Source: Dimorphilus gyrociliatus
Lineage: Eukaryota; Animalia; Annelida
Direction: 5' to 3'
Length of the DNA stretch: 60,323 bases
Assembly: GCA_904063045.1 (NCBI GenBank)
Contig: CAJFCJ010000066.1
Span: forward strand, 64,131 to 124,453
Part shown: one piece after another, positions 2,600-60,323 of the stretch
How the letters are laid out: each line of letters starts with the position of its first letter
Numbering within the stretch: position 1 is the first letter of the stretch
Translations under genes and position numbers: made by a program
Notes under the pieces: generated by a model
Databases searched by the model: none
What the model saw: only the letters and a program-made list of their open reading frames with translations
What the model was told of the DNA's origin: nothing

Positions 2600-3330
2600 G
2601 GGCTCTCGAGATAAATCGTAGGGCTCAATAGGCTACAAAGAAATTTTATTGAAAGCTCTATGGAATCCTAAGGGTTGGTTACTCTCCGGCTTCTCCCTAT
2701 ATTGTTGTAACATTCAAAATCAAAGCCTGAGCTTGAGCAGTCCATTAGCTCCAGCTATTTTAGTAAGGAATAGATCAATATCCTTAATATCTTTCATCAT
2801 ATTTGTCAGATTCTCTCCAACAATATATTATATGATGATAGTTGAAGAATTCTTAAAAAAAAACAATAAGATGAGAATGTCGTTTACGATTTTATCTTCA
2901 AATTGTCACATTATCTTCTGAATGATTCAAAATCCATTACCGGTTTTCTGTAAATTTCTTCAGGAATTATAAATAATTCAACTACATTTTACTGACAATC
3001 AATCTGAGCAGATGTAGTAGATATTAATTCAACTTTTAAACATCCAATCCCAAGCTCTTTGAGGCTAAAGATTATATTTTTAATACTTTTCCAATAAGCA
3101 TAGAGGCTGCACAATTTTGAATAGAATGCATTGAGCTAGATCTAGTTCAGTTGTTGAGAAATACCTCTGAAATATGGTGAGGTTTTAATTGGATAAATTG
3201 TTAAACTACAGTTTCTCTTCACCCTTCTAGAGGATTTTTATTGGTACTGTTGGAAATACAGTGATAGCTCAAACAAGGAACTGCTGCTTGAAAACAACCA
3301 CATCTATTGTTCAAATATAATTTTTAATGG
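2600..3330 (-). pseudogene. Heavily decayed LRR-gene remnant, probably related to the LRRs at 35806-37734
   Basis: Short minus-strand peptides (KLYLNNRCG, TELDLAQC, SLKELGIG, KTGNGF) resemble KVNLSNSRCG and KIGNGF of the RING-B-box-LRR gene. There are many stops. Confidence 0.35.
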
Positions 3331-3443
3331 GAAATTTCGCAATAAATAGTTAAATAAATAGCTTAGTCAAAGTATCCTGTATGTATTCCAAAAACATGTT
3401 GAATCTGATAATGTTTCTTGCCCACATCTTCCTTTATACCTAG

Positions 3444-45021: not shown

Positions 45022-45475
45022 TTACTCTGAATAACAATAGTCCAGTGATGGATGATTTCCATAATGGAGGTTCATGTTATCCAAATCCGTATTAATAATC
45101 ACATAGCCTCTGATGAAAGCTCTGCAGGATGGACACTCAGGTTTTTGAAGACTCAATAGACATTGTGTACAAGCCAGCAGATGGCCACAAGGTAAAATCA
45201 GAGAATTAGCTAAAATATTACAACACAATTTACACTCCAAAATAGTCAAAACTTCATAAAAAGTTTGTTTGTTTGACAAAACAACTGATTCATTTGTATT
45301 TCTGAAATTAAATTATTTCAAAATTTGAAAAAGTGAAAAAAAAATAAAATTAATTATTAATTAATTTATTAATTTTAGTTAAATACTTGTCTACTTCTTT
45401 AACTTTTGCTGCTTTCTCTTTGAAGGTCAATAGTTCATTCATTGAGGCATTTCGGTGGGCTATCAACTCTGCCAT
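45022..45475 (-). CDS. Small IAP-type RING-finger protein, 2 exons, 122 aa (paralog of 3949-4290)
   Basis: Exon 1 45475-45387 (MAELIAHRN...EVD), intron 45386-45302, exon 2 45301-45022. CKLC..LILPCGHLLACTQC..ECPSCRAFIRGY. Confidence 0.85.
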
Positions 45476-46280: not shown

Positions 46281-47274
46281 ACTTTGTATTGTAATTGTAG
46301 GAATTTCTGGTTCGTCACAACTGTAATCGTCCTTTCCAATCATTTACCAACTTGCCAAAGTGCTGGTCCAAATAGAACCTTTAAAGTTCGTCCACAAATA
46401 GTCTAACAAAGGCAATTTTGGTAGAAATTGATTAACAAAACACCAGTATTTCGTGCAAAGAATATGTATTGAGTAAAATGAGCTTCTAGTTCTAAACATT
46501 TGAAGACAAAGAAAAGTTCTAAATATGGTCATGTTTTTATTGTTTTCCTCTTCTAAATACTAGTTGAACCTTTAAAGTTCGTCCACAAATAGTCTAACAA
46601 AGGCAATTTTGGTAGAAATTGATTAACAAAACACCAGTATTTCGTGCAAAGAATATGTATTGAGTAAAATGAGCTTCTAGTTCTAAACATTTGAAGACAA
46701 AGAAAAGTTCTAAATATGGTCATGTTTTTATTGTTTTCCTCTTCTAAATACTAGTTGAATTTCTCAGGTTGGAGAGTTGCATAAGATGTAACAATTTTAG
46801 TAGGACAAGTCCAACAATCAAGAAAACATGTAGATTGTATATTTGACCGTTTTTATATTCTACCTTAATAATGATATTGAATTGATTGAGTTAGTAAATT
46901 TAGCATCAGCATATAAGGAGGAAGGATATCTGAATAATGCATGTTAAGAAGAACAGTATTGTGTATACAATACTGTTGAATAGTGAATATAATCTAAACT
47001 TAGAATTGAAGCATAATTGATAATTAATTGAACTAGTTTTAGTTCGAAATCATAAATTTATGGATTAATAAATTGTAATATTAATGCTATGTTGCAAATA
47101 GCAAATATTCTTTATATAATTCAATAGGTTTTATTACTGCATAATGTGTATGCACTGCCCTATGCGAAACTAGGTCACTACTGCTTATCTTTATCAATGC
47201 TATCTGCATAGTACAATACTGGTTCAATACTACTTCTCTATTGTAGAATATAGCTGACGAATGTATGTGTACAA
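46281..47274 (+). repeat. ~1-kb direct repeat of 52801-53737 (also present inverted at ~54140-55080)
   Basis: Long near-identical stretches (gaacctttaaagttcgtccacaaatag..., ggttggagagttgcataagatg..., gctgacgaatgtatgtgtacaa). Confidence 0.92.
46375..46756 (+). repeat. Perfect 191-bp tandem duplication (2 copies)
   Basis: gaacctttaaag starts at 46375 and 46566. ctaaatactagttgaa occurs at 46553 and 46744. Confidence 0.95.
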
Positions 47275-47444
47275 CTAAAAACTCATTTATTGCATTAAGA
47301 ATAATTATTCTCCTATTCCTATTTTTTATTGATGAATAAAATTTTGTCCACACATTTCATAAAATTTCTTAGCTAAAATACAGATTTTGACAACTGATTA
47401 GATGCTGAATTAAGAGAATTTCAAAATGTTAAACATGATAAAAG

Positions 47445-47568
47445 TGCAAGATTTACTTCAATAAGTCAACAGATGCTTTAATACATCCCTGCAATCATGT
47501 TATCAATTGTAAAGAGTGCATTTCTAGTCTTCCAAACCAGAAATATCCATCATTTAGGGTATTTATTC
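47445..47568 (+). pseudogene. Degenerate IAP-type RING sequence
   Basis: CKIYFNKSTDALIHPCNHVINCKECISSLPNQKYPSFRVFI aligns with the two small RING genes, but several Zn ligands are lost. A partial copy lies at 40188-40274. Confidence 0.75.
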
Positions 47569-48167
47569 CAGAATATGTGCTTATCAAAACAGATGTACAT
47601 GAATTGAATTCTATTAGATAAAAAAAATGTTTATCATATTTAGATTTATAAATTGTGAACTATCAACCTTTAAAAGGGTATATAAACCCAACAAAATTAA
47701 GGTTTATATATTCTTTAAAGGGTTAATAGTTCACAAATTTCAATGTTCACATAAATAAAAGTAACATTGGAAGACAAAGAAAAGTTGTAAATATAGTCTG
47801 TTTATTGTTTTCCTCTTCTAAATAATAATTGAATTTCACAGGTTGGACAGTTCCATAAGATGTAACAATTTTCTTACAGCAAGTCCAACAATCAAGAAAA
47901 CAAGTGGATTATATATTTGACCATTTTTGTATTCTACTTTGTGTAAAAAACTAGGAAGCATGTCTAAATAATCCATATTAATAGTATTGTGTATACAACA
48001 CTATTGAATAGTGATTTAAAATCTAAAATTCCAAATAAAACCATAATTAAAGTAATATCTTATTGTTGAGGAGTTCATCTGCTATATTTCTTCTCCTTTT
48101 ATTTTTCAAGAGATGTTATTGTTTCTATCATGAAGAAAGCAATCATGCTCAGTGTCTTCTTAACAGC

Positions 48168-51100
48168 TTAATGATGAAAAGATGATAGAAAGATATTTTT
48201 TTGTATTTTTCTGGTTGCTGGCTGTGATTTTCCTATTTCTTCTTTGTTAATCTTTTTATAGATGTCAATGTTACCTTTACACCATAAATAGAATGCTGCT
48301 GCACCTGCACTTGCCTCCTTGACTTCTTGCAGATTTAATTCACAAATTATTTGTTCAGCTCTGAGAATGATTGCTGGATGTACAGTTAAGATTTTAAGAG
48401 CTTTAATTTTCTTTAAAATAGAATAAGAGCATGCATATTTAATAAAAACTCGACATTCTTTCCATTCATCAGTTTGTCCTTCATCAATTGATAAAATCAA
48501 TAATGTTGATTTTATAACCAGATGTACAACAGCAGGTGGTTGATTATACTGATTTAATTCTGCAATACACTTTGCATCAAGTTTTAAAATCCTGTTTTGC
48601 AAACCACAAATTTTTTCTAAATTTGCTTTTAATTCATTAGCTTTTGATAAATCTTTAATTAATAAAGGATTTATTGGTTTAACAGAAGCTTTGTCTATAG
48701 CTACTTTTAACTTTTTATAATCTTTTTCTTCATATGCCTTTTTCAAATCTACAATATTTTTAATGATATTTTTAATAATTTCAGTATCTAGATGTGAAAT
48801 TTTAATTACCTGATGCCTTCTTTGCTACATCTTCCTGATCATTGTGTTGTTGCTGTGATTTCTCTTCCTTTTCATCATTTCTATTACCTGGCTTTCCTGT
48901 GGTTTCTTCTGCATTATTTACAATTTCTTTTTTACCTTTTTCATTTCCATTCTCCTTTAGGAAGAAATAATCATTTTACAAAAGAGAAAAAAACATTATT
49001 TACAAATATCTTACATTTATTTTAAAAGTTTTATCCTCTCCATCATCAGAGTCATCAGCTGGTAGAAATTCACTGATATAGATAACTTCTTCCATTTTTA
49101 ATGACCAATCTATTTCACCAATTTCTTCTATATTAGTAGCATTTTCAATTGTCTCAAATTGAACATTTGGCACATATTTCATTGTTTTAATAAAATCATT
49201 TTCATCAGATACTTCATTTTTAGAAATATCAATTGTTTGTGAAGCATTTATCTTGTCTATATTTTCATTTTTACTAATAGCTTGGCTATTATCAATTGCA
49301 GGTTTATCCAGTGTACTGTTAATTTCACTATTCCCTATTACAGGTTCAGCCAGTTCACTAGTGGTTTCACAATTCTCTATTGTAGCTTCCTCTGGTTCAC
49401 TGGCGATTTCACTATTCTCTATTGCAGGTTTAGCCATTTTCATAATTGGATTTTTAAAAATTTTATAAATTAAAATTTCAGTAAAAAATTTTGCATTTTT
49501 ATAAATTTTTGCTCTAATAACTAAATCTCCAAAATTTTCACCAGTGTCAATTTCACATTCCCATATATCATTAAAGAGGTCAAAATGAAAAATTTCATTG
49601 TCATTTACACGACAGGCAATCATTTCATCAGCTTTAAAACCTTCAATCTGTATTAATACTTTTTCATTTGAGTAGAGTTTTCTAAATGGTTGAAGAATTT
49701 TATGAGTTTCACTAATTCTCCATTTATCAGTAACAATTGGAAATTGAAATGAATTTGTATTAGATTCAATTGCATAAAAATAAGAATTATAGATCAATTC
49801 ATAATTTTTTCTGGAATTTAATTCCTTTGCTTCAATTTCAAGTTTATACATTCCTGGTAATGGAAAATTGATGTAGAATGTAACATCTTCATAACTATTT
49901 ACAAAGAATGAATACATAGATAAATCATGTCCTTCATTGTTTTCATCATACCATTTTAATTCAATTTTAAATTGACATGATATCTTTTTAAATATCTTAA
50001 AATGTATATTTTTAGAACATTCTTGATAAGATTGGAAATTATCTTCCATCCTTAATTTTAACCTAAAGAAATGTGTTTGTTTGCCAATAGTTCTACTTCC
50101 ATTATCTGGAAATATTAAAGTATAATTTGCTTTTTCCTCACTTTTAACAATATATGAAGTAATTGTAGGCAAACTTTTTTCTGATAATTTTTCAAAAAAT
50201 TTAAAACATAAACAATTACAATGATATTCAATTTTTCGATTTTGTCCACAAATATTTATACCGTATTCTCCTTCAGATGGAAAAAAGAATTTTATAAGTC
50301 CTAGACCATTTTCAAATGTCGAGATGCAATATTGTTGCAGAAAACAAGAAGAATACTTAATACTTGTAATTTCTACAGAAAACTCATATTCATTATCATC
50401 TCCATTAAAATGAATCTCTGTATAATTTTTATTTGATGAAGTATACATTCCAAGTACAGGGAACATATTTGTAAAATTGCATTTTCTAGCTCTATAATTT
50501 GGTCCAAGTTCAGATAGATTTGTGTTTGGAAATGGAGGAATATATATATTATCTCTTTTTGTGTATTTAATAATGTAGTCAGTACACCATTTATAGTCAG
50601 GTTCTTTAAGTTTAATATCATCTTTGGACACCCAAAGTCTTAGCTTATATTTAGCTGTTTGAGGTAATCTCAGCCTAATGATTAGAAGGTTTTTTGATTT
50701 GTTTTGAAATATGGTTATATATAAACTTGGATCTATAGTTTCTTTTTTTATATCTTGTACTAGACCAGTATCTAAAACAGTCTCATCACTAATAAAAATA
50801 GTATAAGCAAATATTACAGGGAATTCTTTGTCTGTTCCAATAAGAATTTCATTCCTGGATTGTTCAGCAAAAACAGTACACTTGGGATGAGAAATAATTC
50901 CAAGCTTATGCTCAAAAAATGCAGGTCTTAAATATGCCATTTCCTCAAATTCTTGTAAAGTTACTGTTCTAGCTAAAAGCTGATGTTTACTCAAAACTGG
51001 AATATGCTTGTAAATGAATTCCTCTGGATTGGGCAAAAAATATCCATTATCATATTGATATTTTTTTTGACTTGTAAGATTTTTCTTTTTGAAGAAAAAC

Positions 51101-51931
51101 TGGAGTAATGAATATTTTTTTTCCCCTTGAAAAATTTTGTGACTTCCAAAATTAGCATCACAAAGATACCAGAAACCATTTATTCTAATAATATTCCAAA
51201 AATTCTTATCATTTAAATTTATTTTCTCTCCAATTTCATAATTTGCATGTTTAGCCCAACCAGAGACTTCTTCACAGTAAATATTTACAAAACTATTTGA
51301 AAACAAAAATCATTTGAGTACATTTAAAAAGTTATTTTATAAGTTTTCTTTTTATGCATACCTGCAAAGAATTTTTAACACTTTACCGTAGGATATATTG
51401 TTTTGTTTTAACCTATATAGAGTATATCTCATTTGATTGTCCATCAACTTATCATAATTTATTTTATCTAGATTGATTGAAGCTAACCAACGGAATAAAG
51501 CTCGAGCTCTTAACATTTCATCATTGAAATCCTTAATTAAAAAAATTGCAACTTGTTGTGGTGTTTTGTTTAAAAATGATTTGTTCATTTTTTTCATGAC
51601 AAATTTATCAACATGGCGAAAATCATAATTTTCTTCTATCCATTCTTTGGAAATTGGATTAGGAAAAATAATGTGAGGAGGTATTGCAATTTGTCTGTAT
51701 TTAACCAATTCATACCATTCTGTATTTGCTATACGTAGAGTAACATTAGTTGGAAAACCCATACTCATAAACTCTCCTTTAAGAGCATTATGAACATCAG
51801 TGAGTTGTTTTTCAATATCTTTTTTTTTTAAATAACAAGATTAAAGTTAATTTGAATTTAAAAATTTAAATATAACCTGGATTATATATTGCAGGAATGA
51901 TAACATTTTGTTTTGAGAAACAAATTCCCAT
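48168..51931 (-). CDS. Hillarin/KY-like pseudo-transglutaminase with N-terminal acylation motif and C-terminal dynein-MTBD-like domain
   Basis: Exons 51931-51877 (MGICFSKQ..), 51818-51362, then ~51297-49010 and 3' exons to 48168. Motifs ARALFRWL, SYGKVLKILC..VSGWAK, FWNIIRINGFWYLCDANFG, YQYDNGYFLPNPEEFIY and QLLARTVTLQEFE. Ig-like KY repeats, an acidic linker, then the PPAVVHLV..W..ASAGAAAFYLW domain. The last intron boundaries are uncertain. Confidence 0.85.
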
Positions 51932-54900
51932 ATTTCCAATTTAAATACTGATGAACAGTGTCTTGTAGGGAGAGAGACAAAAAAATAACTTTTAGGTGTA
52001 ACTGTAACTTTAACCAAGTATTCTATTTCTGTTTTGAGGGATTACAGTATGTTTAATAATTTTCTTTTTCACACAATATTGTAAATTAAACCTAAATGTA
52101 AATATGCAGACCAGGACATGCTACAACTTGGTCTCACCTATTTTTAAAACCTTCTTAACAACTGTAAACATTATTAATAACACAAGTTGGATTTTTTACT
52201 GCCAAGTTCTACTTTCCCTTTCTATTTCACCAATAGCTGCACAAGGGAAACAGACAAAGGATTTAATTAGCAAAAATTGAATGTGAAGTTAGGGTTGAGC
52301 CTGTTTGTTAAAACTAAATGAAATTGAGATGAAGAAATACAAAGGTTAAAGTGTGGCCCAGTTAGAACAGCCAGGTGTATCCGAACAAAACTCTAGTTGT
52401 TAGAGTTAAAAATTTTGGGGATGAGAGAAAACTAAACTAAAGTTTAGGGTAAATTTTTGGTCATTTCTAGGGTTGAAAAATATTTTTTACAATTGCAAAA
52501 ATTTTATTCTCATCCTTATTTAGTTCAGGGTTAGGATTTAGGTATGCGTTGCACTAAACAAATCTAGGACAATAATGCTTATCTTTATCAGTGCATTGAT
52601 ATGAACCATATTGGTTCAATACTACTTATCTATTGTAGAATAACCCTAAGCATAACAAGCTTAATTTCTATTTCAGTCTTCTTTTTTGTTTTTTGTCAAC
52701 TGTTACATTCAATAAAGTAGGGTTGATTGCAATATTTCTCTATCAGTGTTTCATTGACTAGCAGAAATTAATTCATTGCTGCCAAATTGGCCATCAACTA
52801 CTGTACTTTGTTGTATTGTAATTGGAGGAATTTCTGGTTTGTCACAACTGTAATTGTCCTTTCCAATCATTTACCACCTTGCCAAAGTACTCAAACAAAT
52901 AGAACCTTTAAAGTTCGTCCACAAATAGTCTAACAAAGGCAATTTTGGTAGAAATTAATTAACAAAACACCAGTATTTCGTGCAAAGAATATGTATTGAG
53001 TAAAATGAGCTTCTAGTTCTAAACAAGCTAGTTTAAACAACTAGCTGATGGTTAGAAAACTGAACTATCAACTGTTAATTTCGTAGGGTTTATATACTCT
53101 TTTAAGGGTTGATAGTTCACAAATTTCAATGTTCACAAAAACAAAAGTAACATTTGAAGACAAAGAAAAGTTGTAAATATGGTCACGTTTTTATTGTTTT
53201 CCTCTTCTAAATAATAGTTGAATTTCTCAGGTTGGAGAGTTGCATAAGATGTAACAATTTTAGTAGGACAAGTCCAACAATCAAGAAAACATGTAGATTG
53301 TATATTTGACCGTTTTTATATTCTACCTTAATAATGATATTGAATTGATTGAGTTAGTAAATTTAGCATGAGCATATGCAGAGGAAGTATATCTGATTAA
53401 TGCATGTTAAAAAGAACAGTATTGTGTATACAATACTGTTGAATAGTGAATATAATCTAAACTTAGAATTTAAGCATAATTGATAATTAATTGAACTAGT
53501 TTTAGTTCGAAATCATAAATTTATGGATTAATAAATTGTAATATTAATGCTAGGTTGCAAATAGCAAATATTCTTTATATAATTCAATAGGTTTTATTGC
53601 TGCATAATGTGTATGCACTGCCCTATGCGAAACTAGGTCACTACTGCTTATCTTTATCAGTGCTATCTGCATAGTACAATACTGGTTCAATACTACTTCT
53701 CTATTGTAGAATATAGCTGACGAATGTATGTGTACAAATTTATAAAATATATCTTCAAACTGGATTCTCTAAAAGACTAAAATTACAAAATGATTTTTTT
53801 GATAATAATTAGACTTGAATGATAAATAATTAAGTTGAAATTGAAATCTGTAGCATGTTCAAATAATGATCATAGTAATAATTTATTATCAATCAATCAC
53901 AATACAATGAAAAAATAATTTCTTATTTAAATATTCATTGGAATATTTAAATTGATTTTTTCAATCCTTGTATGTGATTGATTGATAATAAATTATTACT
54001 ATGATCATTATGAACATGCTACAGATTCAATTTCAACTTAATTATTTATCATTCAAGTCTAATTTATTATCAAAAAAATCTATTTTTGGTAATTTTAAGT
54101 CTTCTAGAGAATCCAGTTTGAAGATATATTTTATAAATTTGTACACATACATTCATCAGCTATATTCTACAATAGAGAAGTAGTATTGAACCAGTATTGT
54201 ACTATGCAGATAGCACTGATAAAGATAAGCAGTAGTGACCTAGTTTCGCATAGGGCAGTGCATACACATTATGCAGCAATAAAACCTATTGAATTATATA
54301 AAGAATATTTGCTATTTGCAACCTAGCATTAATATTACAATTTATTAATCCATACATTTATGATTTCGAACTAAAACTAGTTCAATTAATTATCAATTAT
54401 GCTTAAATTCTAAGTTTAGATTATATTCACTATTCAACAGTATTGTATACACAATACTGTTCTTTTTAACATGCATTAATCAGATATACTACCTCCTTAT
54501 ATGCTGATGCTAAATTTACTAACTCAATCAATTGAATATCATTATTAAGGTAGAATATAAAAACGGTCAAATATACAATCTACATGTTTTCTTGATTGTT
54601 CGACTTGTCCTACTAAAATTGTTACATCTTATGCAACTCTCCAACCTGAGAAATTCAACTATTATTTAGAAGAGGAAAACAATAAAAACATGACCGTATT
54701 TAGAACTTTTCTTTGTCTTCAAATGTTACTTTTGTTTTTGTGAACATTGAAATTTGTGAACTATCAACCCTTAAAAGAGTATATAAACCCTACGAAATTA
54801 ACTGTTGATAGTTCAGTTTTCTAACCGTCAGCTAGTTGTTTAAACTAGCTTGTTTAGAACTAGAAGCTCATTTTACTCAATACATATTCTTTGCACGAAA

Positions 54901-55945
54901 TACTGGTGTTTTGTTAATTAATTTCTACCAAAATTGCCTTTGTTAGACTATTTGTGGACGAACTTTAAAGGTTCTATTTGTTTGAGTACTTTGGCAAGGT
55001 GGTAAATGATTGGAAAGGACAATTACAGTTGTGACAAACCAGAAATTCCTCCAATTACAATACAACAAAGTACAGTAGTTGATGGCCAATTTGGCAGCAA
55101 TGAATTAATTTCTGCTAGTCAATGAAACACTGATAGAGAAATATTGCAATCAACCCTACTTTATTGAATGTAACAGTTGACAAAAAACAAAAAAGAAGAC
55201 TGAAATAGAAATTAAGCTTGTTATGCTTAGGGTTATTCTACAATAGATAAGTAGTATTGAACCAATATGGTTCATATCAATGCACTGATAAAGATAAGCA
55301 TTATTGTCCTAGATTTGTTTAGTGCAACGCATACCTAAATCCTAACCCTGAACTAAATAAGGATGAGAATAAAATTTTTGCAATTGTAAAAAATATTTTT
55401 CAACCCTAGAAATGACCAAAAATTTACCCTAAACTTTAGTTTAGTTTTCTCTCATCCCCAAAATTTTTAACTCTAACAACTAGAGTTTTGTTCGGATACA
55501 CCTGGCTGTTCTAACTGGGCCACACTTTAACCTTTGTATTTCTTCATCTCAATTTCATTTAGTTTTAACAAACAGGCTCAACCCTAACTTCACATTCAAT
55601 TTTTGCTAATTAAATCCTTTGTCTGTTTCCCTTGTGCAGCTATTGGTGAAATAGAAAGGGAAAGTAGAACTTGGCAGTAAAAAATCCAACTTGTGTTATT
55701 AATAATGTTTACAGTTGTTAAGAAGGTTTTAAAAATAGGTGAGACCAAGTTGTAGGCATGTCCTGGTCTGCATATTTACATTTAGGTTTAATTTACAATA
55801 TTGTGTGAAAAAGAAAATTATTAAACATACTGTAATCCCTCAAAACAGAAATAGAATACTTGGTTAAAGTTACAGTTACACCTAAAAGTTATTTTTTTGT
55901 CTCTCTCCCTACAAGACACTGTTCATCAGTATTTAAATTGGAAAT

Positions 55946-58900
55946 ATGGGAATTTGTTTCTCAAAACAAAATGTTATCATTCCTGCAATATATAATCCAG
56001 GTTATATTTAAATTTTTAAATTCAAATTAACTTTAATCTTGTTATTTAAAAAAAAAAGATATTGAAAAACAACTCACTGATGTTCATAATGCTCTTAAAG
56101 GAGAGTTTATGAGTATGGGTTTTCCAACTAATGTTACTCTACGTATAGCAAATACAGAATGGTATGAATTGGTTAAATACAGACAAATTGCAAACCTCCT
56201 CACATTATTTTTCCTAATCCAATTTCCAAAGAATGGATAGAAGAAAATTATGATTTTCGCCATGTTGATAAATTTGTCATGAAAAAAATGAACAAATCAT
56301 TTTTAAACAAAACACCACAACAAGTTGCAATTTTTTTAATTAAGGATTTCAATGATGAAATGTTAAGAGCTCGAGCTTTATTCCGTTGGTTAGCTTCAAT
56401 CAATCTAGATAAAATAAATTATGATAAGTTTGGAGCAATCAAAATGAGATATACTCTATATAGGTTAAAACAAAACAATATATCCTACGGTAAAGTGTTA
56501 AAAATTCTTTGCAGGTATGCATAAAAAGAAAACCTTATAAAATAACTTTTTAAATGTACTCAAATGATTTTTGTTTTCAAATAGTTTTGTAAATATTTAC
56601 TGTGAAGAAGTCTCTGGTTGGGCTAAACATGCAAATTATGAAATTGGAGAGAAAATAAATTTAAATGATAAGAATTTTTGGAATATTATTAGAATAAATG
56701 GTTTCTGGTATCTTTGTGATGCTAATTTTGGAAGTCACAAAATTTTTCAAGGGGAAAAAAAATATTCATTACTCCAGTTTTTTCTTCAAAAGAAAAATCT
56801 TACAAGTCAAAAAAAATATCAATATGATATGGATATTTTTTGCCCAATCCAGAGGAATTCATTTACAAGCATATTCAGTTTTGAGTAAACATCAGCTTTT
56901 AGCTAGAACAGTAACTTTACAAGAATTTGAGGAAATGGCATATTTAAGACCTGCATTTTTTGAGCATAAGCTTGGAATTATTTCTCATCCCAAGTGTACT
57001 GTTTTTGCTGAACAATCCAGGAATGAAATTCTTATTGGAACAGACAAAGAATTCCCTGTAATATTTGCTTATACTATTTTTATTAGTGATGAGACTGTTT
57101 TAGATACTGGTCTAGTACAAGATATAAAAAAAGAAACTATAGATCCAAGTTTATATATAACCATATTTCAAACAAATCAAAAACCTTCTAATCATTAGGC
57201 TGAGATTACCTCAACAGCTAAATATAAGCTAAGACTTTGGGTGTCCAAAGATGATATTAAACTTAAAGAACCTGACTATAAATGGTGTACTGACTACATT
57301 ATTAAATACACAAAAAGAGATAATATATATATTCCTCCATTTCCAAACACAAATCTATCTGAACTTGGACCAAATTAATAGAGCTAGAAAATGCAATTTT
57401 ACAAATATGTTCCCTGTACTTGGAATGTATACTTCATCAAAAATAAAATTATACAGAGATTCATTTTAATGGAGATGATAATGAATATGAGTTTTCTGTA
57501 GAAATTACAAGTATTAAGTATTCTTCTTGTTTTCTGCAACAATATTGCATCTCGACATTTGAAAATGGTCTAGGACTTATAAAATTCTTTTTTCCATCTG
57601 AAGGAGAATACGGTATAAATATTTGTGGACAAAATCGAAAAAATTGAATTCATTGTAATTGTTTATGTTTTAAATTTTTTGAAAAATTATCAGAAAAAAG
57701 TTTGCCTACAATTACTTCATATATTGTTAAAAGTGAGGAAAAAGCAAATTATACTTTAATATTTCCAGATAATGGAAGTAGAACTATTGGCAAACAAACA
57801 CATTTCTTTAGGTTAAAATTAAGGATGGAAGATAATTTCCAATCTTATCAAGAATGTTCTAAAAATATACATTTTAAGATATTTAAAAAGATATCATGTC
57901 AATTTAAAATTGAATTAAAATGGTATGATGAAAACAATGAAGGACATGATTTATCTATGTATTCATTCTTTGTAAATAGTTATGAAGATGTTACATTCTA
58001 CATCAATTTTCCATTACCAGGAATGTATAAACTTGAAATTGAAGCAAAGGAATTAAATTCCAGAAAAAATTATGAATTGATCTATAATTCTTATTTTTAT
58101 GCAATTGAATCTAATACAAATTCATTTCAATTTCCAATTGTTACTGATAAATGGAGAATTAGTGAAACTCATAAAATTCTTCAACCATTTAGAAAACTCT
58201 ACTCAAATGAAAAAGTATTAATACAGATTGAAGGTTTTAAAGCTGATGAAATGATTGCCTGTCGTGTAAATGACAATGAAATTTTTCATTTTGACCTCTT
58301 TAATGATATATGGGAATGTGAAATTGACACTGGTGAAAATTTTGGAGATTTAGTTATTAGAGCAAAAATTTATAAAAAGCAAAATTTTTTACTGAAATTT
58401 TAATTTATAAAATTTTTAAAAATCCAATTATGAAAATGGCTAAACCTGCAATAGAGAATAGTGAAATCGCCAGTGAACAGAGGAAGCTACAATAGAGAAT
58501 TGTGAAACCACTAGTGAACTGGCTGAACCTGTAATAGGGAATAGTGAAATTAACAGTACACTGGATAAACCTGCAATTGATAATAGCCAAGCTATTAGTA
58601 AAAATGAAAAATTAGAACATAAATGCTTCACAAACAATTGATATTTCTAAAATGAAGTATCTGATGAAAATGATTTTATTAAAACAATGAAATATGTGCC
58701 AAATGTTCAATTTGAGACAATTGAAAATGCTACTAATATAGAAGAAATTGGTGAAATAGATTGGTCATTAAAAATGGAAGAAGTTATCTATATCAGTGAA
58801 TTTCTACCAGCTGATGACTCTGATGATGGAGAGGATAAAACTTTTAAATAAATGTAAGATATTTGTAAATAATGTTTTTTTCTCTTTTGTAAAATGATTA

Positions 58901-59715
58901 TTTCTTCCTAAAGGAGAATGGAAATGAAAAGGTAAAAAAGAAATTGTAAATAATGCAGAAGAAACCACAGGAAAGCCAGGTAATAGAAATGATGAAAAGG
59001 AAGAGAAATCACAGCAACAACAACAATGATCAGGAAGATGTAGCAAAGAAGGCATCAGGTAATTAAAATTTCACATCTAGATACTGAAATTATTAAAATA
59101 TCATTAAAAAATTGTAGATTTGAAAAAGGCATATGAAGAAAAAGATTATAAAAAGTTAAAAGTAGCTATAGACAAAGCTTCTGTTAAACCAATAAATCCT
59201 TTATTAATTAAAGATTTATCAAAAGCTAATGAATTAAAAGCAAATTTAGAAAAAATTTGTGGTTTGCAAAACAGGATTTTAAAACTTGATGCAAATGTAT
59301 TGCAGAATTAAATCAGTATAATCAACCACCTGCTGTTGTACATCTGGTTATAAAATCAACATTATTGATTTTATCAATTGATGAAGGACAAACTGATGAA
59401 TGGAAAGAATGTCAAGTTTTTATTAAATATGCATGCTCTTATTCTATTTTAAAGAAAATTAAAGCTCTTAAAATCTTAACTGTAGATCCAGCAATCATTC
59501 TCAGAGCTGAACAAATAATTTGTGAATTAAATCTGCAAGAAGTCAAGGAGGCAAGTGCAGGTGCAGCAGCATTCTATTTATGGTGTAAAGGTAACATTGA
59601 CATCTATAAAAAGATTAACAAAGAAGAAATAGGAAAATCACAGCCAGCAACCAGAAAAATACAAAAAAATACTTTCTATCATCTTTTCATCATTAAGCTG
59701 TTAAGAAGACACTGA
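55946..59715 (+). pseudogene. Inverted copy of the hillarin-like gene, with many 1-nt indels
   Basis: It is the reverse complement of 48168-51931. The ORF is split into many pieces (56279, 56571, 56698, 57251, 57702, 59120, 59365), mostly at homopolymers. Confidence 0.85.
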
Positions 59716-60323
59716 GCATGATTGCTTTCTTCATGATAGAAACAATAACATCTCTTGAAAAATAAAAGGAGAAGAAATATACAGCAGATGAACTCCTCAA
59801 CAATAAGATATTACTTTAATTATGGTTTTATTTGGAATTTTAAATTTTAAATCACTATTCATAGTGTTGTATACACAATACTATTAATATGGATTATTTA
59901 GACATGCTTCCTAGTTTTTTACACAAAGTAGAATACAAAAGGTCAAATATATAATCCACTTGTTTTCTTGATTGTTGGACTTGCTGTAAGAAAATTGTTA
60001 CATCTTATGGAACTGTCCAACCTGTGAAATTCAATTATTATTTAGAAGAGGAAAACAATAAACAGACTATATTTACAACTTTTCTTTGTCTTCCAATGTT
60101 ACTTTTATTTATGTGAACATTGAAATTTGTGAACTATTAACCCTTTAAAGAATATATAAACCTTAATTTTGTTGGGTTTATATACCCTTTTTAAAGGTTG
60201 ATAGTTCACAATTTATAAATCTAAATATGATAAACATTTTTTTTATCTAATAGAATTCAATTCATGTACATCTGTTTTGATAAGCACATATTCTGGAATA
60301 AATACCCTAAATGATGGATATTT

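What the first reader, a model, noticed from the sequence alone, without database searches (positions are those of the whole stretch)
48258..48602. Dynein microtubule-binding-domain-like module fused to a membrane-anchored hillarin-like pseudo-transglutaminase
Seen in sequence: LQNRILKLDAKCIAELNQYNQPPAVVHLVIKSTLLILSIDEGQTDEWKECRVFI...HPAIILRAEQIICELNLQEVKEASAGAAAFYLWCKGNIDIY. Established knowledge: the dynein heavy-chain stalk MTBD has the pattern QNav.si.k..l.Ev.sm.nPPa.Vklale.i.lllg...tdWk.ir..i...i..ai......n.e.v..aS.ac.....Wa.a...Y. The match runs through all six helices. The same gene begins MGICFSK (myristoyl Gly2, Cys4, Ser6-Lys7). Inference: a motor-less protein with a membrane anchor, an inactive transglutaminase fold, an acidic linker and an MTBD could tether membrane or cortex to microtubules. 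This is a candidate undescribed linker system.
Basis: partly seen in the sequence, partly recalled or inferred. Interest (0 to 1): 0.85.

Follow-up and report, generated by a model that had tools for sequence, protein, structure and literature searches.

The report
Dynein microtubule-binding module on KY protein
A worm gene joins a lipid-anchored, catalytically dead transglutaminase-like scaffold to a true copy of the tip of the dynein stalk (the part that grips microtubules), an unstudied architecture shared by many invertebrates and a good candidate for a motor-less membrane-to-microtubule tether.

Summary
On the minus strand of a Dimorphilus gyrociliatus (annelid) window, 48602-48258 encodes exactly the quoted peptide. 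It is the last exon of a five-exon gene (51931-48171; DgyrCDS14711; my revised model is 1171 aa).

The C-terminal 190 aa is a true homologue of the dynein stalk tip and microtubule-binding domain (MTBD):
- Alone, it hits only dynein MTBDs in the PDB, marginally (E 0.04).
- A 42-sequence profile built only from KY-type proteins hits dynein heavy chains exclusively (top 60, best E 9e-12).
- The AlphaFold model (pLDDT 95.9) superposes on the mouse dynein MTBD at Z 15.6, rmsd 3.1 A over 142 residues.

- an MGxxxS myristoylation motif, present in 23 of 43 family members;
- a transglutaminase-like domain that has lost its catalytic Cys and His;
- three Ig-like_KY domains;
- an acidic linker.

RNA contigs confirm the introns. 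The module is widespread (437 cluster representatives) in annelids, molluscs, brachiopods, echinoderms, hemichordates, tunicates and amphioxus. It also sits on cytoplasmic tails of CLCA/VWA and EGF membrane proteins.

Microtubule binding is inferred, not shown. The same fold occurs in the radial-spoke protein RSP2 and in a bovine sperm axoneme chain that is probably EFCAB5. I found no paper describing the architecture. The scan's first readers flagged it five times on other pieces of this genome.

The parts
51877..51931 (-). Exon 1: start codon and MGICFSKQNVIIPAIYNP (N-myristoylation/palmitoylation-type motif: G2, C4, S6, K7)
   Evidence: Sequence read. RNA joint 51818/51877. The MGxxxS N-terminus is shared by 23 of 43 KY-type family members from several phyla, all with Ser at position 6.
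51362..51818 (-). Exon 2: N-terminal helical region and first half of the degenerate transglutaminase-like domain (catalytic Cys position is N159)
   Evidence: RNA joints. Alignment with family members. Family profile against an active transglutaminase-like PDB chain (9crn_A) and FAP246.
49015..51292 (-). Exon 3: second half of the transglutaminase-like domain (His position is N201, Asp D216 kept), three Ig-like_KY domains, and the start of the acidic linker
   Evidence: Pfam PF23265 at E 2.5e-35 with 3 stretches. RNA contigs are contiguous with 0 mismatches. The annotated internal intron of P0001 is not supported.
48810..48954 (-). Exon 4: acidic, low-complexity linker
   Evidence: Splice joints 48953/49014 and 48751/48813 in RNA contigs. 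The linker as a whole (residues 786-978) has 46 D/E against 20 K/R.
48171..48748 (-). Exon 5: complete dynein-stalk-tip-like module (residues 979-1171); the stop codon follows at 48170-48168
   Evidence: AF2 model with pLDDT 95.9 and pTM 0.90. VIA Z 15.6 to mouse dynein residues 3263-3407. Family profile against the PDB at E 9e-12.
48585..48668 (-). CC1-like helix (residues 1006-1033), the ascending half of a short antiparallel stalk
   Evidence: DSSP helix 28-55 of the model. It is included in the alignments to whole dynein stalk structures 5ayh and 3wuq.
48312..48575 (-). Globular MTBD-like core with helices H1-H6 (residues 1037-1124). It carries the family-invariant E, P and W, plus Y..PP, the L[GS] turn after H2 and the S before H6
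48249..48308 (-). CC2-like helix (residues 1126-1145), followed by a tail helix and a conserved QPA..K.QK.IF C-terminal motif (to 48171)
   Evidence: DSSP helices 148-167 and 180-190. The tail motif is conserved in leech, Owenia and Nucella members.

Best explanation
The gene encodes a non-motor, probably N-myristoylated and palmitoylated scaffold. Its parts, in order, are a catalytically dead KY/hillarin-type transglutaminase-like domain, three Ig-like_KY domains, a roughly 190-residue acidic flexible linker, and a bona fide homologue of the dynein heavy-chain stalk tip. That last module is a short antiparallel coiled coil (CC1/CC2) carrying a six-helix MTBD. The hairpin is about four heptads long. 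It is flanked by two extra N-terminal helices and a conserved C-terminal helix, which may close it off. If so, it would be locked in one registry instead of being switched by an AAA+ ring. The most likely function is a passive tether: the lipidated N-terminus sits on a membrane or cortex, and the C-terminal module binds the microtubule lattice through the H1/H3/H6 face, which keeps several basic residues. Shown here: the homology and fold of the module, the gene structure, the loss of catalytic residues, conservation of the MGxxxS motif, and a wide phyletic spread. Inferred: acylation, microtubule binding, the fixed registry and the tethering role.
For: Homology: a KY-only family profile hits only dynein heavy chains in the PDB, always at the MTBD (best E 9e-12; top 60 all dynein, covering cytoplasmic 1 and 2 and axonemal classes). 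Single-sequence and three-paralogue searches point the same way. PF12777 hits 33 of 86 family members, and language-model neighbours include PF12777 clusters. Fold: the AF2 model has pLDDT 95.9. The top ~50 Foldseek hits are nearly all dynein stalk/MTBD, apart from one radial-spoke entry (7jtk_C), with prob 1.0 for most and TM 0.70-0.75 on isolated MTBD chains. VIA Z is 15.6/15.5/14.4 and drops to 4.6 for unrelated folds. One gene: GT..AG introns in phase, RNA junctions, and the same fusion in paralogues and in leech, Owenia, bivalves, gastropods, Lingula and amphioxus. Membrane theme: 23 of 43 KY-type members start MGxxxS. Other carriers of the module are type I or multi-pass membrane proteins with the module in the C-terminal tail after the TM helix (CLCA+VWA, EGF, tetraspan-like). 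Microtubule-facing surface: family positions equivalent to mouse Q3300, R3306, K3335 and N3381 are basic in 45-64% of members. The window protein has K at model positions 60, 97 and 144 and R at 100. Mean net charge of the core is +3. Mouse residue numbering is from my own knowledge.
Against: No binding data exist. Some classic dynein contact residues are not kept: K3298/K3299 equivalents are D/A, and the R3382 equivalent is E in the window protein and rarely basic in the family. The strongest family-specific basic motif (K.TGK.S loop and RR/KK on H4, 81-90% basic) has no dynein counterpart and may indicate another ligand. The same fold occurs in solved non-dynein axonemal chains: the radial-spoke protein RSP2, and 9fqr_Xl, which I take to be the radial-spoke protein EFCAB5. 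I did not check whether those domains touch the microtubule lattice. The exon 4-exon 5 junction was seen only in a contig from a 96-98% identical, roughly ten-fold deeper copy, not the window's exact allele.
Confidence: 0.5

Rival explanations
1. The module is a true dynein-MTBD homologue that has been re-purposed as a protein-protein docking domain. It would not bind the microtubule lattice. The protein would be a membrane-anchored scaffold for another, unknown partner, as I suppose (unchecked) for the MTBD-like domains of the radial-spoke protein RSP2 and of 9fqr_Xl, which is probably EFCAB5.
For: Solved non-dynein chains share the fold: 7jtk_C (RSP2 residues 440-590) at Z 11.2 and 9fqr_Xl at Z 9.5. 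AFDB hits to RSP2, EFCAB5 and FAZ1 have prob 1.0. EFCAB5 is described as a radial-spoke stalk protein that contacts RGS22, LRRD1 and STKLD1 (PMC11779644). The best-conserved basic residues of this family lie on the H3-H4 loop and H4, not on dynein's contact helices, and the R3382 equivalent is lost.
Against: By sequence the family is far closer to real dynein MTBDs (E 9e-12) than to RSP2 or EFCAB5, neither of which is named among the top 60 profile hits. Basic residues persist on H1, H3 and H6. Repeated attachment to membrane proteins' cytoplasmic tails fits a cytoskeletal tether at least as well.
Confidence: 0.4
2. The last exon belongs to a separate transcript or gene, and the fusion is an annotation artefact.
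For: RNA contig depth is about ten times higher over exon 5 (177) than over the KY exons (12-25). The deep contigs differ from the window by 1.5-4%. The window's exact allele is therefore not seen across the exon 4/5 junction.
Against: A spliced exon 4-exon 5 junction with the predicted 61-nt GT..AG intron is present in RNA, and the same contig continues into a homologous linker exon. The exon 3-exon 4 junction is seen with 0 mismatches. All phases fit one ORF of 1171 aa. The same N-to-C architecture occurs in two paralogues and in at least six other phyla.
Confidence: 0.04
3. The similarity to the dynein MTBD is chance or generic helical-bundle and coiled-coil resemblance.
For: The single-sequence E-value is only 0.04. 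Pfam gives no hit for this protein. The best Foldseek E-value is a modest 8e-4. Helical folds often give middling Z-scores (note).
Against: The family profile gives E 9e-12 with exclusively dynein hits, aligned over the globular core and matching the conserved E, PP, LLG, W and S...W positions. Z 15.6 stands far above the next unrelated fold at 4.6. The check for contamination by dynein fragments was passed.
Confidence: 0.01

Closest known systems
Dynein heavy chain stalk tip / microtubule-binding domain (Pfam PF12777 'MT'; e.g. mouse DYNC1H1 3263-3407, PDB 3ERR, 6RZB; yeast Dyn1 MTBD 6KIO)
   Same: Both have an antiparallel CC1/CC2 hairpin bearing a six-helix globular domain. They share the core signature (E in H1, (N)PP before H2, LLG end of H2, W in H3, S...W in H6). 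Profile E is 9e-12 and Z is 15.6 with rmsd about 3 A.
   Different: There is no AAA+ ring, linker or tail. The coiled coil is only about 4 heptads long. It is flanked by extra N- and C-terminal helices rather than running into AAA4/AAA5, so nothing is present to drive the ATP-controlled registry switching of dynein. Several dynein tubulin-contact residues are changed. A family-specific basic K.TGK.S / RR motif lies on the H3-H4 loop and H4.
KY (kyphoscoliosis peptidase) / hillarin family of transglutaminase-like proteins with Ig-like_KY (PF23265) domains
   Same: The window protein has a transglutaminase-like domain followed by repeated Ig-like_KY domains. Databases name the orthologues 'kyphoscoliosis peptidase' or 'KY-like immunoglobulin-like domain-containing protein'.
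   Different: The catalytic Cys and His are replaced throughout this subfamily. It has an N-terminal MGxxxS acylation motif and a C-terminal dynein-MTBD-like module. From my own knowledge, neither feature is described for vertebrate KY, leech hillarin, Drosophila Hil or C. elegans LTD-1.
MTBD-like domains of the radial-spoke protein RSP2 (PDB 7JTK chain C) and of the bovine sperm axoneme chain 9FQR Xl (probably EFCAB5), and of trypanosome FAZ1
   Same: These are non-motor proteins that carry the same hairpin-plus-helical-knob fold (Z 11.2 and 9.5; prob 1.0).
   Different: They are much more distant in sequence and are not named among the top 60 profile hits. RSP2 and EFCAB5 are radial-spoke proteins and FAZ1 belongs to the flagellar attachment zone; they are not lipid-anchored KY scaffolds. 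I found no paper that describes their fold as MTBD-like.
Chlamydomonas FAP246 (central-apparatus protein, PDB 7N6G/7SQC)
   Same: It is the best solved-structure sequence relative of the transglutaminase-like domain (E 1.7e-8), and it is a microtubule-associated, non-enzymatic-looking transglutaminase-like domain.
   Different: The architecture is otherwise different. No Ig-like_KY array or MTBD-like module was tested or seen for it here.

Membership tests
Dynein stalk/MTBD domain (PF12777-type) | Significant sequence-profile similarity to dynein heavy-chain MTBDs | tested here: met
   The KY-only 42-sequence profile against the PDB gives best E 9e-12, with the top 60 all dynein heavy chains at the MTBD. 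PF12777 hits 33 of 86 family members, best E 4.6e-7. The window protein alone is sub-threshold (E 0.04; no Pfam hit).
Dynein stalk/MTBD domain (PF12777-type) | Fold: antiparallel coiled coil (CC1/CC2) bearing a six-helix globular domain | tested here: met
   AF2 pLDDT 95.9. VIA Z 15.6 with rmsd 3.1 A over 142 residues to mouse 3263-3407, and Z 12.3 to the microtubule-bound 6rzb_C. Foldseek TM is 0.70-0.75 on isolated MTBDs.
Dynein stalk/MTBD domain (PF12777-type) | Conserved core residues (E in H1, PP before H2, LLG, W in H3, S and W in H6) | tested here: met
   E64, P71, W96 and W156 are invariant, and Y68, L86 and S147 are over 90% conserved in the family. They align to the same dynein columns. 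The window protein has LS instead of LG at the end of H2.
Dynein stalk/MTBD domain (PF12777-type) | Binds microtubules | not testable with these tools
   Only indirect evidence: basic residues are partly retained on H1/H3/H6, and the R3382 equivalent is lost.
Dynein heavy chain (motor protein) | AAA+ ring (AAA1-AAA6), linker and tail flanking the stalk | tested here: not met
   Pfam finds only Ig-like_KY in the 1110-aa annotated protein. The module is C-terminal, and the protein ends 26 residues after CC2. It is therefore not a dynein.
KY/hillarin transglutaminase-like family | Ig-like_KY domains (PF23265) | tested here: met
   E 2.5e-35 with three stretches. The same is found in paralogues and orthologues.
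KY/hillarin transglutaminase-like family | Transglutaminase-like core domain | tested here: met
   Not detected by Pfam in the window protein itself. The region is homologous to one that scores PF01841 in relatives (1.7e-12 for P0014 and 2.5e-7 for P0032; 0.0017 for P0002). The family profile hits the transglutaminase-like PDB chains FAP246 and 9crn_A.
Active transglutaminase/cysteine-protease-like enzymes | Cys-His-Asp catalytic triad | tested here: not met
   Aligned against 9crn_A (VCNGYA ... HAWNAV ... VDVTW), the Cys column is K in most members and N159 here, and the His column is G/E/S in most members and N201 here. Only the Asp (D216) is kept.
N-myristoylated (dually acylated) proteins | M-G-x-x-x-S/T consensus with permissive residues, plus a nearby Cys for palmitate | tested here: met
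   The window protein starts MGICFSK. Paralogues start MGICVSK, MGFCFSK and MGICCST. 23 of 43 family members start MGxxxS, many of them MGC. Actual lipid attachment is not testable here.

The most novel reading that the evidence does not exclude
The tip of a dynein heavy-chain stalk was captured early in bilaterian evolution as a free-standing, registry-locked, ATP-independent microtubule-binding cassette. It has since been shuffled onto the cytoplasmic ends of at least four kinds of membrane-attached proteins: myristoylated KY pseudo-transglutaminases, CLCA/VWA type I proteins, EGF-repeat receptors and tetraspan-like proteins. This would define a previously unrecognised class of membrane-to-microtubule tethers in Spiralia and invertebrate deuterostomes. 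It may also explain the axon-hillock localisation reported for leech hillarin (recalled from my own knowledge).
Probability: 0.35. Interest if true: 0.8.

Novelty: new variant of a known kind. Interest (0 to 1): 0.68.

Why it matters
The dynein MTBD is generally treated as a part found only in the motor, with its affinity set by ATP-driven sliding of the stalk helices. This work finds an unmistakable homologue with no motor, as a mobile C-terminal cassette with 437 cluster representatives spread across many invertebrate phyla. Most of the long carriers checked are KY-type proteins, many of them lipid-anchored, or membrane-spanning proteins.

If the cassette binds microtubules, it offers three things:
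- a natural, minimal dynein MTBD that may be fixed in one registry, useful for dissecting how registry sets affinity;
- a new family of cortical microtubule anchors;
- a concrete molecular function for the poorly understood KY/hillarin pseudo-enzymes.

If it does not bind microtubules, it shows how the fold has been re-used, perhaps as in radial-spoke proteins. Either result can be obtained with a simple co-sedimentation experiment.

Tried and rejected
- **Direct Pfam scan.** Scanning the exon and the whole annotated protein gave no dynein hit, only noise such as BALF1 at E 0.011. The link had to be made through a family profile.
- **Contamination worry.** I was concerned that the 86-sequence profile A2 held dynein fragments. 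I rebuilt it from 42 proteins with a verified KY region, and the result held. My first KY filter was useless because the queries overlapped the C-terminal module.
- **Exon 5 start.** My initial model started exon 5 at about 48787 (DTEIIKNIIKNIV...). I rejected it because the RNA junction and the public annotation both use the acceptor at 48749/48748.
- **Annotated internal intron.** P0001 removes 61 aa of an Ig-like domain. I rejected this because an RNA contig runs through it and the paralogues keep the segment.
- **Acidic linker as a family hallmark.** Rejected. It is strong in the Dimorphilus paralogues (net -18 to -43 over 150 aa), but the family median is only -4.5.
- **Link to leech hillarin.** Searching the Helobdella C-terminal region for full-length relatives found only the query itself, and this tool's word filter makes that blank uninformative.
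- **Literature.** Searches for dynein + MTBD + kyphoscoliosis, 'MTBD-like', hillarin, and RSP2/EFCAB5 + MTBD found no description of this architecture.
- **Tubulin-contact list.** The Lacey et al. eLife 2019 text gave no usable list. Residue equivalences rest on my own knowledge of mouse numbering and are flagged as such.
- **Second copy in the window.** The copy on the plus strand (55.9-59.7 kb) is not an independent intact paralogue. It is part of a 6.3-kb inverted copy riddled with single-base indels.
Full report
**What is there**

The window is AT-rich animal DNA at about 27-30% GC. Protein matches identify it as Dimorphilus gyrociliatus, a small annelid. The plus-strand frame is full of stops. 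The peptide lies in the last exon of a five-exon minus-strand gene that starts at the ATG at 51931 with MGICFSK. The public annotation is DgyrCDS14711 (P0001, 1110 aa).

**Gene model**

I joined the exons at the junctions seen in RNA contigs of a public run:
- exon 1: 51931-51877
- exon 2: 51818-51362
- exon 3: 51292-49015
- exon 4: 48954-48810
- exon 5: 48748-48171

This gives one open frame of 1171 codons. The three introns printed in register show canonical GT..AG ends. The third intron (49014-48955) is GT..AG once its ends are shifted by one base, as read and allowed by the 'cut +1'.

The three upstream junctions come from contigs identical to the window. The exon 4/5 junction (a 61-nt intron) comes from a contig about ten times deeper. 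That contig differs from the window by a few percent and continues into a related but not identical linker. A very close second expressed copy therefore exists, with the same exon 4-exon 5 arrangement.

Two corrections follow:
- The public model's extra intron, which removes 61 aa of an Ig-like domain, is contradicted by a continuous RNA contig and by the paralogues.
- My own first guess for the exon 5 acceptor was wrong.

**The C-terminal module is a dynein stalk tip**

The sequence evidence strengthens stepwise:
- Pfam does not recognise the module in this protein.
- Single-sequence phmmer against all PDB sequences gives only five hits at E<=10. All are mouse cytoplasmic dynein MTBD constructs (E 0.04-0.18).
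- A profile of the three Dimorphilus paralogues gives nine dynein heavy chains among ten hits, from different classes and always at the MTBD.
- An exhaustive HMMER search of 1.84 billion representatives found 437 relatives at E<=1e-3.
- An 86-sequence profile of these gives E 5.5e-13 to the yeast dynein MTBD.
- To exclude contamination by dynein fragments, I kept only 42 sequences whose parent protein has a verified KY region upstream. The result held, with E 9e-12 and the top 60 hits all dynein heavy chains: cytoplasmic 1 and 2 and many axonemal classes from yeast, mammals, Chlamydomonas, Tetrahymena and kinetoplastids.

The alignment covers the globular core. It matches the family-invariant E, P, W and W and the near-invariant Y, L and S to the dynein signature columns. 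Pfam PF12777 matches 33 of the 86 family segments at E<=0.1, with best E 4.6e-7.

**Fold**

AlphaFold2 with the family alignment gives pLDDT 95.9 and pTM 0.90. The predicted elements, by model position, are:
- two short N-terminal helices
- a long helix at 28-55 (CC1)
- six short helices at 59-146 (H1-H6)
- a long helix at 148-167 (CC2)
- a C-terminal helix at 180-190

Foldseek against the PDB returns almost only dynein stalk/MTBD entries among its top ~50 (one is radial spoke 7jtk_C), at prob 1.0 for most. TM is 0.70-0.75 when normalised on isolated MTBD chains. VIA-align gives Z 15.6 to mouse dynein 3263-3407 (rmsd 3.1 A over 142 residues), then 15.5, 14.4, 13.6 and 12.9. It gives Z 12.3 to the microtubule-bound 6RZB. 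Unrelated folds drop to Z 4.6.

**The rest of the protein**

- Three Ig-like_KY domains are present (PF23265, E 2.5e-35).
- Upstream lies a region homologous to the transglutaminase core of relatives (PF01841 at 1.7e-12 in a pearl-oyster member; alignment).
- Its family profile hits the transglutaminase-like chains FAP246 (E 1.7e-8) and 9crn_A.
- Against 9crn_A, the catalytic Cys column is Lys in most members and N159 here. The His column is N201 here. The Asp (D216) is kept. The whole subfamily is therefore a pseudo-enzyme.
- The N-terminus MGICFSK fits the myristoylation consensus, with a Cys available for palmitate. Of 43 KY-type members, 23 start MGxxxS, always with Ser at position 6 and often as MGC. 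The others may be truncated gene models.
- The linker (residues 786-978) has 46 acidic against 20 basic residues. Such acidity is a Dimorphilus trait and not family-wide.

**Distribution**

- KY plus module is found in five or more Dimorphilus genes, and in Helobdella, Owenia, bivalves, gastropods, Lingula and amphioxus.
- AlphaFold DB adds carriers of the module in oyster, scallop, rotifer, orthonectid, sea urchin, sea cucumber and Ciona.
- The same module ends CLCA+VWA proteins in amphioxus, VWA proteins in Styela, an EGF-repeat protein in Saccoglossus and tetraspan-like proteins.
- Where a TM helix is present, the module lies in the tail after it.
- One amphioxus KY member also carries a CARD.
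- Database names are 'uncharacterized', 'kyphoscoliosis peptidase' or 'KY-like Ig-like domain-containing'. One 199-aa scallop fragment is auto-named 'cytoplasmic dynein 2 heavy chain 1'.
- I found no paper describing the architecture.
- First readers of this scan flagged the same architecture on five other pieces of this genome, none followed up.

**How it most likely works**

Shown:
- The module is a motor-less stalk tip with a coiled coil of only about four heptads.
- The hairpin is flanked by extra helices and is not connected to AAA domains.

Inferred:
- The extra helices may pack on the hairpin, so that its registry is fixed. I could not inspect model coordinates.
- Any binding would then be constitutive rather than ATP-gated.
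- The N-terminal lipid anchors place the KY scaffold on a membrane.
- The flexible linker lets the module reach microtubules.

Evidence for microtubule binding:
- The family is closely related to real MTBDs.
- Basic residues persist on H1, H3 and H6. Family positions 60, 66, 97 and 144 are basic in 45-64% of members, and the window protein has K60, K97, R100 and K144.
- The core has a mildly positive net charge.
- The module recurs on membrane proteins.

Evidence against microtubule binding:
- The equivalents of K3298/K3299 and R3382 are not basic here (mouse numbering is from my own knowledge).
- The best-conserved basic motif (K.TGK.S loop and RR on H4) is family-specific.
- The fold also occurs in the radial-spoke protein RSP2 and in the bovine sperm chain 9fqr_Xl, which I take to be EFCAB5. 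I have not checked whether those domains contact the lattice.

I put homology at about 0.95 or higher. The full tether model stands at about 0.5 and a non-microtubule docking role at about 0.4.

**Verdict**

The function is a well-founded, easily testable hypothesis. This is a new variant of a known kind: a dynein MTBD cassette outside a motor, on KY pseudo-transglutaminases. It is unnoticed in the literature I could search and only patchily caught by automatic annotation.

Noticed in passing
window 47541-53873 versus 54001-60323: The right end of the window is an inverted copy of the region that holds the gene. Identity is 98.96% over 6.3 kb, and the arms meet at about 53.94 kb. The two arms differ by 22 mismatches and about 40 one- or two-base indels, many in short base runs. 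This pattern fits a fold-back long-read assembly artefact or a very recent, poorly polished palindrome. The copy of the gene on the plus strand (about 55946-59712) is broken by many frameshifts. A 179-aa public gene model (P0010) sits on it.
   Followed up: partly
window 48100-48931 (RNA contigs of run X1): Contigs over exon 5 and exon 4 are about ten times deeper (163-177) than those over the KY exons (12-25). They carry 1.5-4% differences from the window and diverge upstream of 48931 into a related linker. Two of the differences (48380 and 48451, giving H>D and R>Q) are shared with the inverted copy. A third, near-identical and more highly expressed copy or allele therefore seems to exist.
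   Followed up: partly
window about 50160-50350 (minus strand, within exon 3): The public annotation DgyrCDS14711 removes 61 aa (SIKYSSCFLQ...EKLSE) as an intron. An RNA contig runs straight through it, and paralogues DgyrCDS14906 and DgyrCDS14921 keep the segment. The true product is probably 1171 aa, not 1110.
   Followed up: yes
window 45022-45279 and 45350-45475 (minus strand): The downstream neighbour has an ORF ending in a C3HC4 RING-finger-like motif (CKLCCN...CGH...C..C...CP.CR), preceded by a coiled-coil-like exon. It is probably an E3 ligase gene.
   Followed up: no
window 46344-46723 and 47087-47353, repeated at 52874-53032 and 53553-53768: Repeated ORF fragments (MTIFRTFLCLQMFRTRSS... 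and HIHSSAIFYNREVVLNQYCTMQ...) flank the gene on both sides. They are probably pieces of a transposable element.
   Followed up: no
P0012 (Dimorphilus, 311 aa) and P0011/P0013 (DgyrCDS14529, DgyrCDS14453): More Dimorphilus paralogues carry the module. P0012 appears to join a PAN/Apple-like N-terminus to a KY fragment and half of the module. It is probably a chimeric or truncated gene model.
   Followed up: no
PDB 7jtk_C residues 440-590; 9fqr_Xl residues 1326-1493; AFDB FAZ1 76-250, EFCAB5 1309-1480: The solved radial-spoke protein RSP2, the bovine sperm axoneme chain 9fqr_Xl (probably EFCAB5) and the predicted FAZ1 model contain a domain with the dynein-MTBD fold (Z 11.2 and 9.5 for the solved chains; Foldseek prob 1.0). 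I found no paper that says so. The fold seems to be a wider, undescribed superfamily in cilium-associated proteins.
   Followed up: partly
P0075 / P0174 (Branchiostoma KY proteins): An amphioxus KY protein with eight Ig-like_KY domains carries a CARD domain just before the MTBD-like module. This hints at a link to death-fold signalling.
   Followed up: no
transglutaminase-like region, residues about 96-260 (window 51588-51025, minus strand): The closest solved relative by sequence is FAP246, a protein of the Chlamydomonas central apparatus (E 1.7e-8). That protein is another microtubule-associated transglutaminase-like domain.
   Followed up: no
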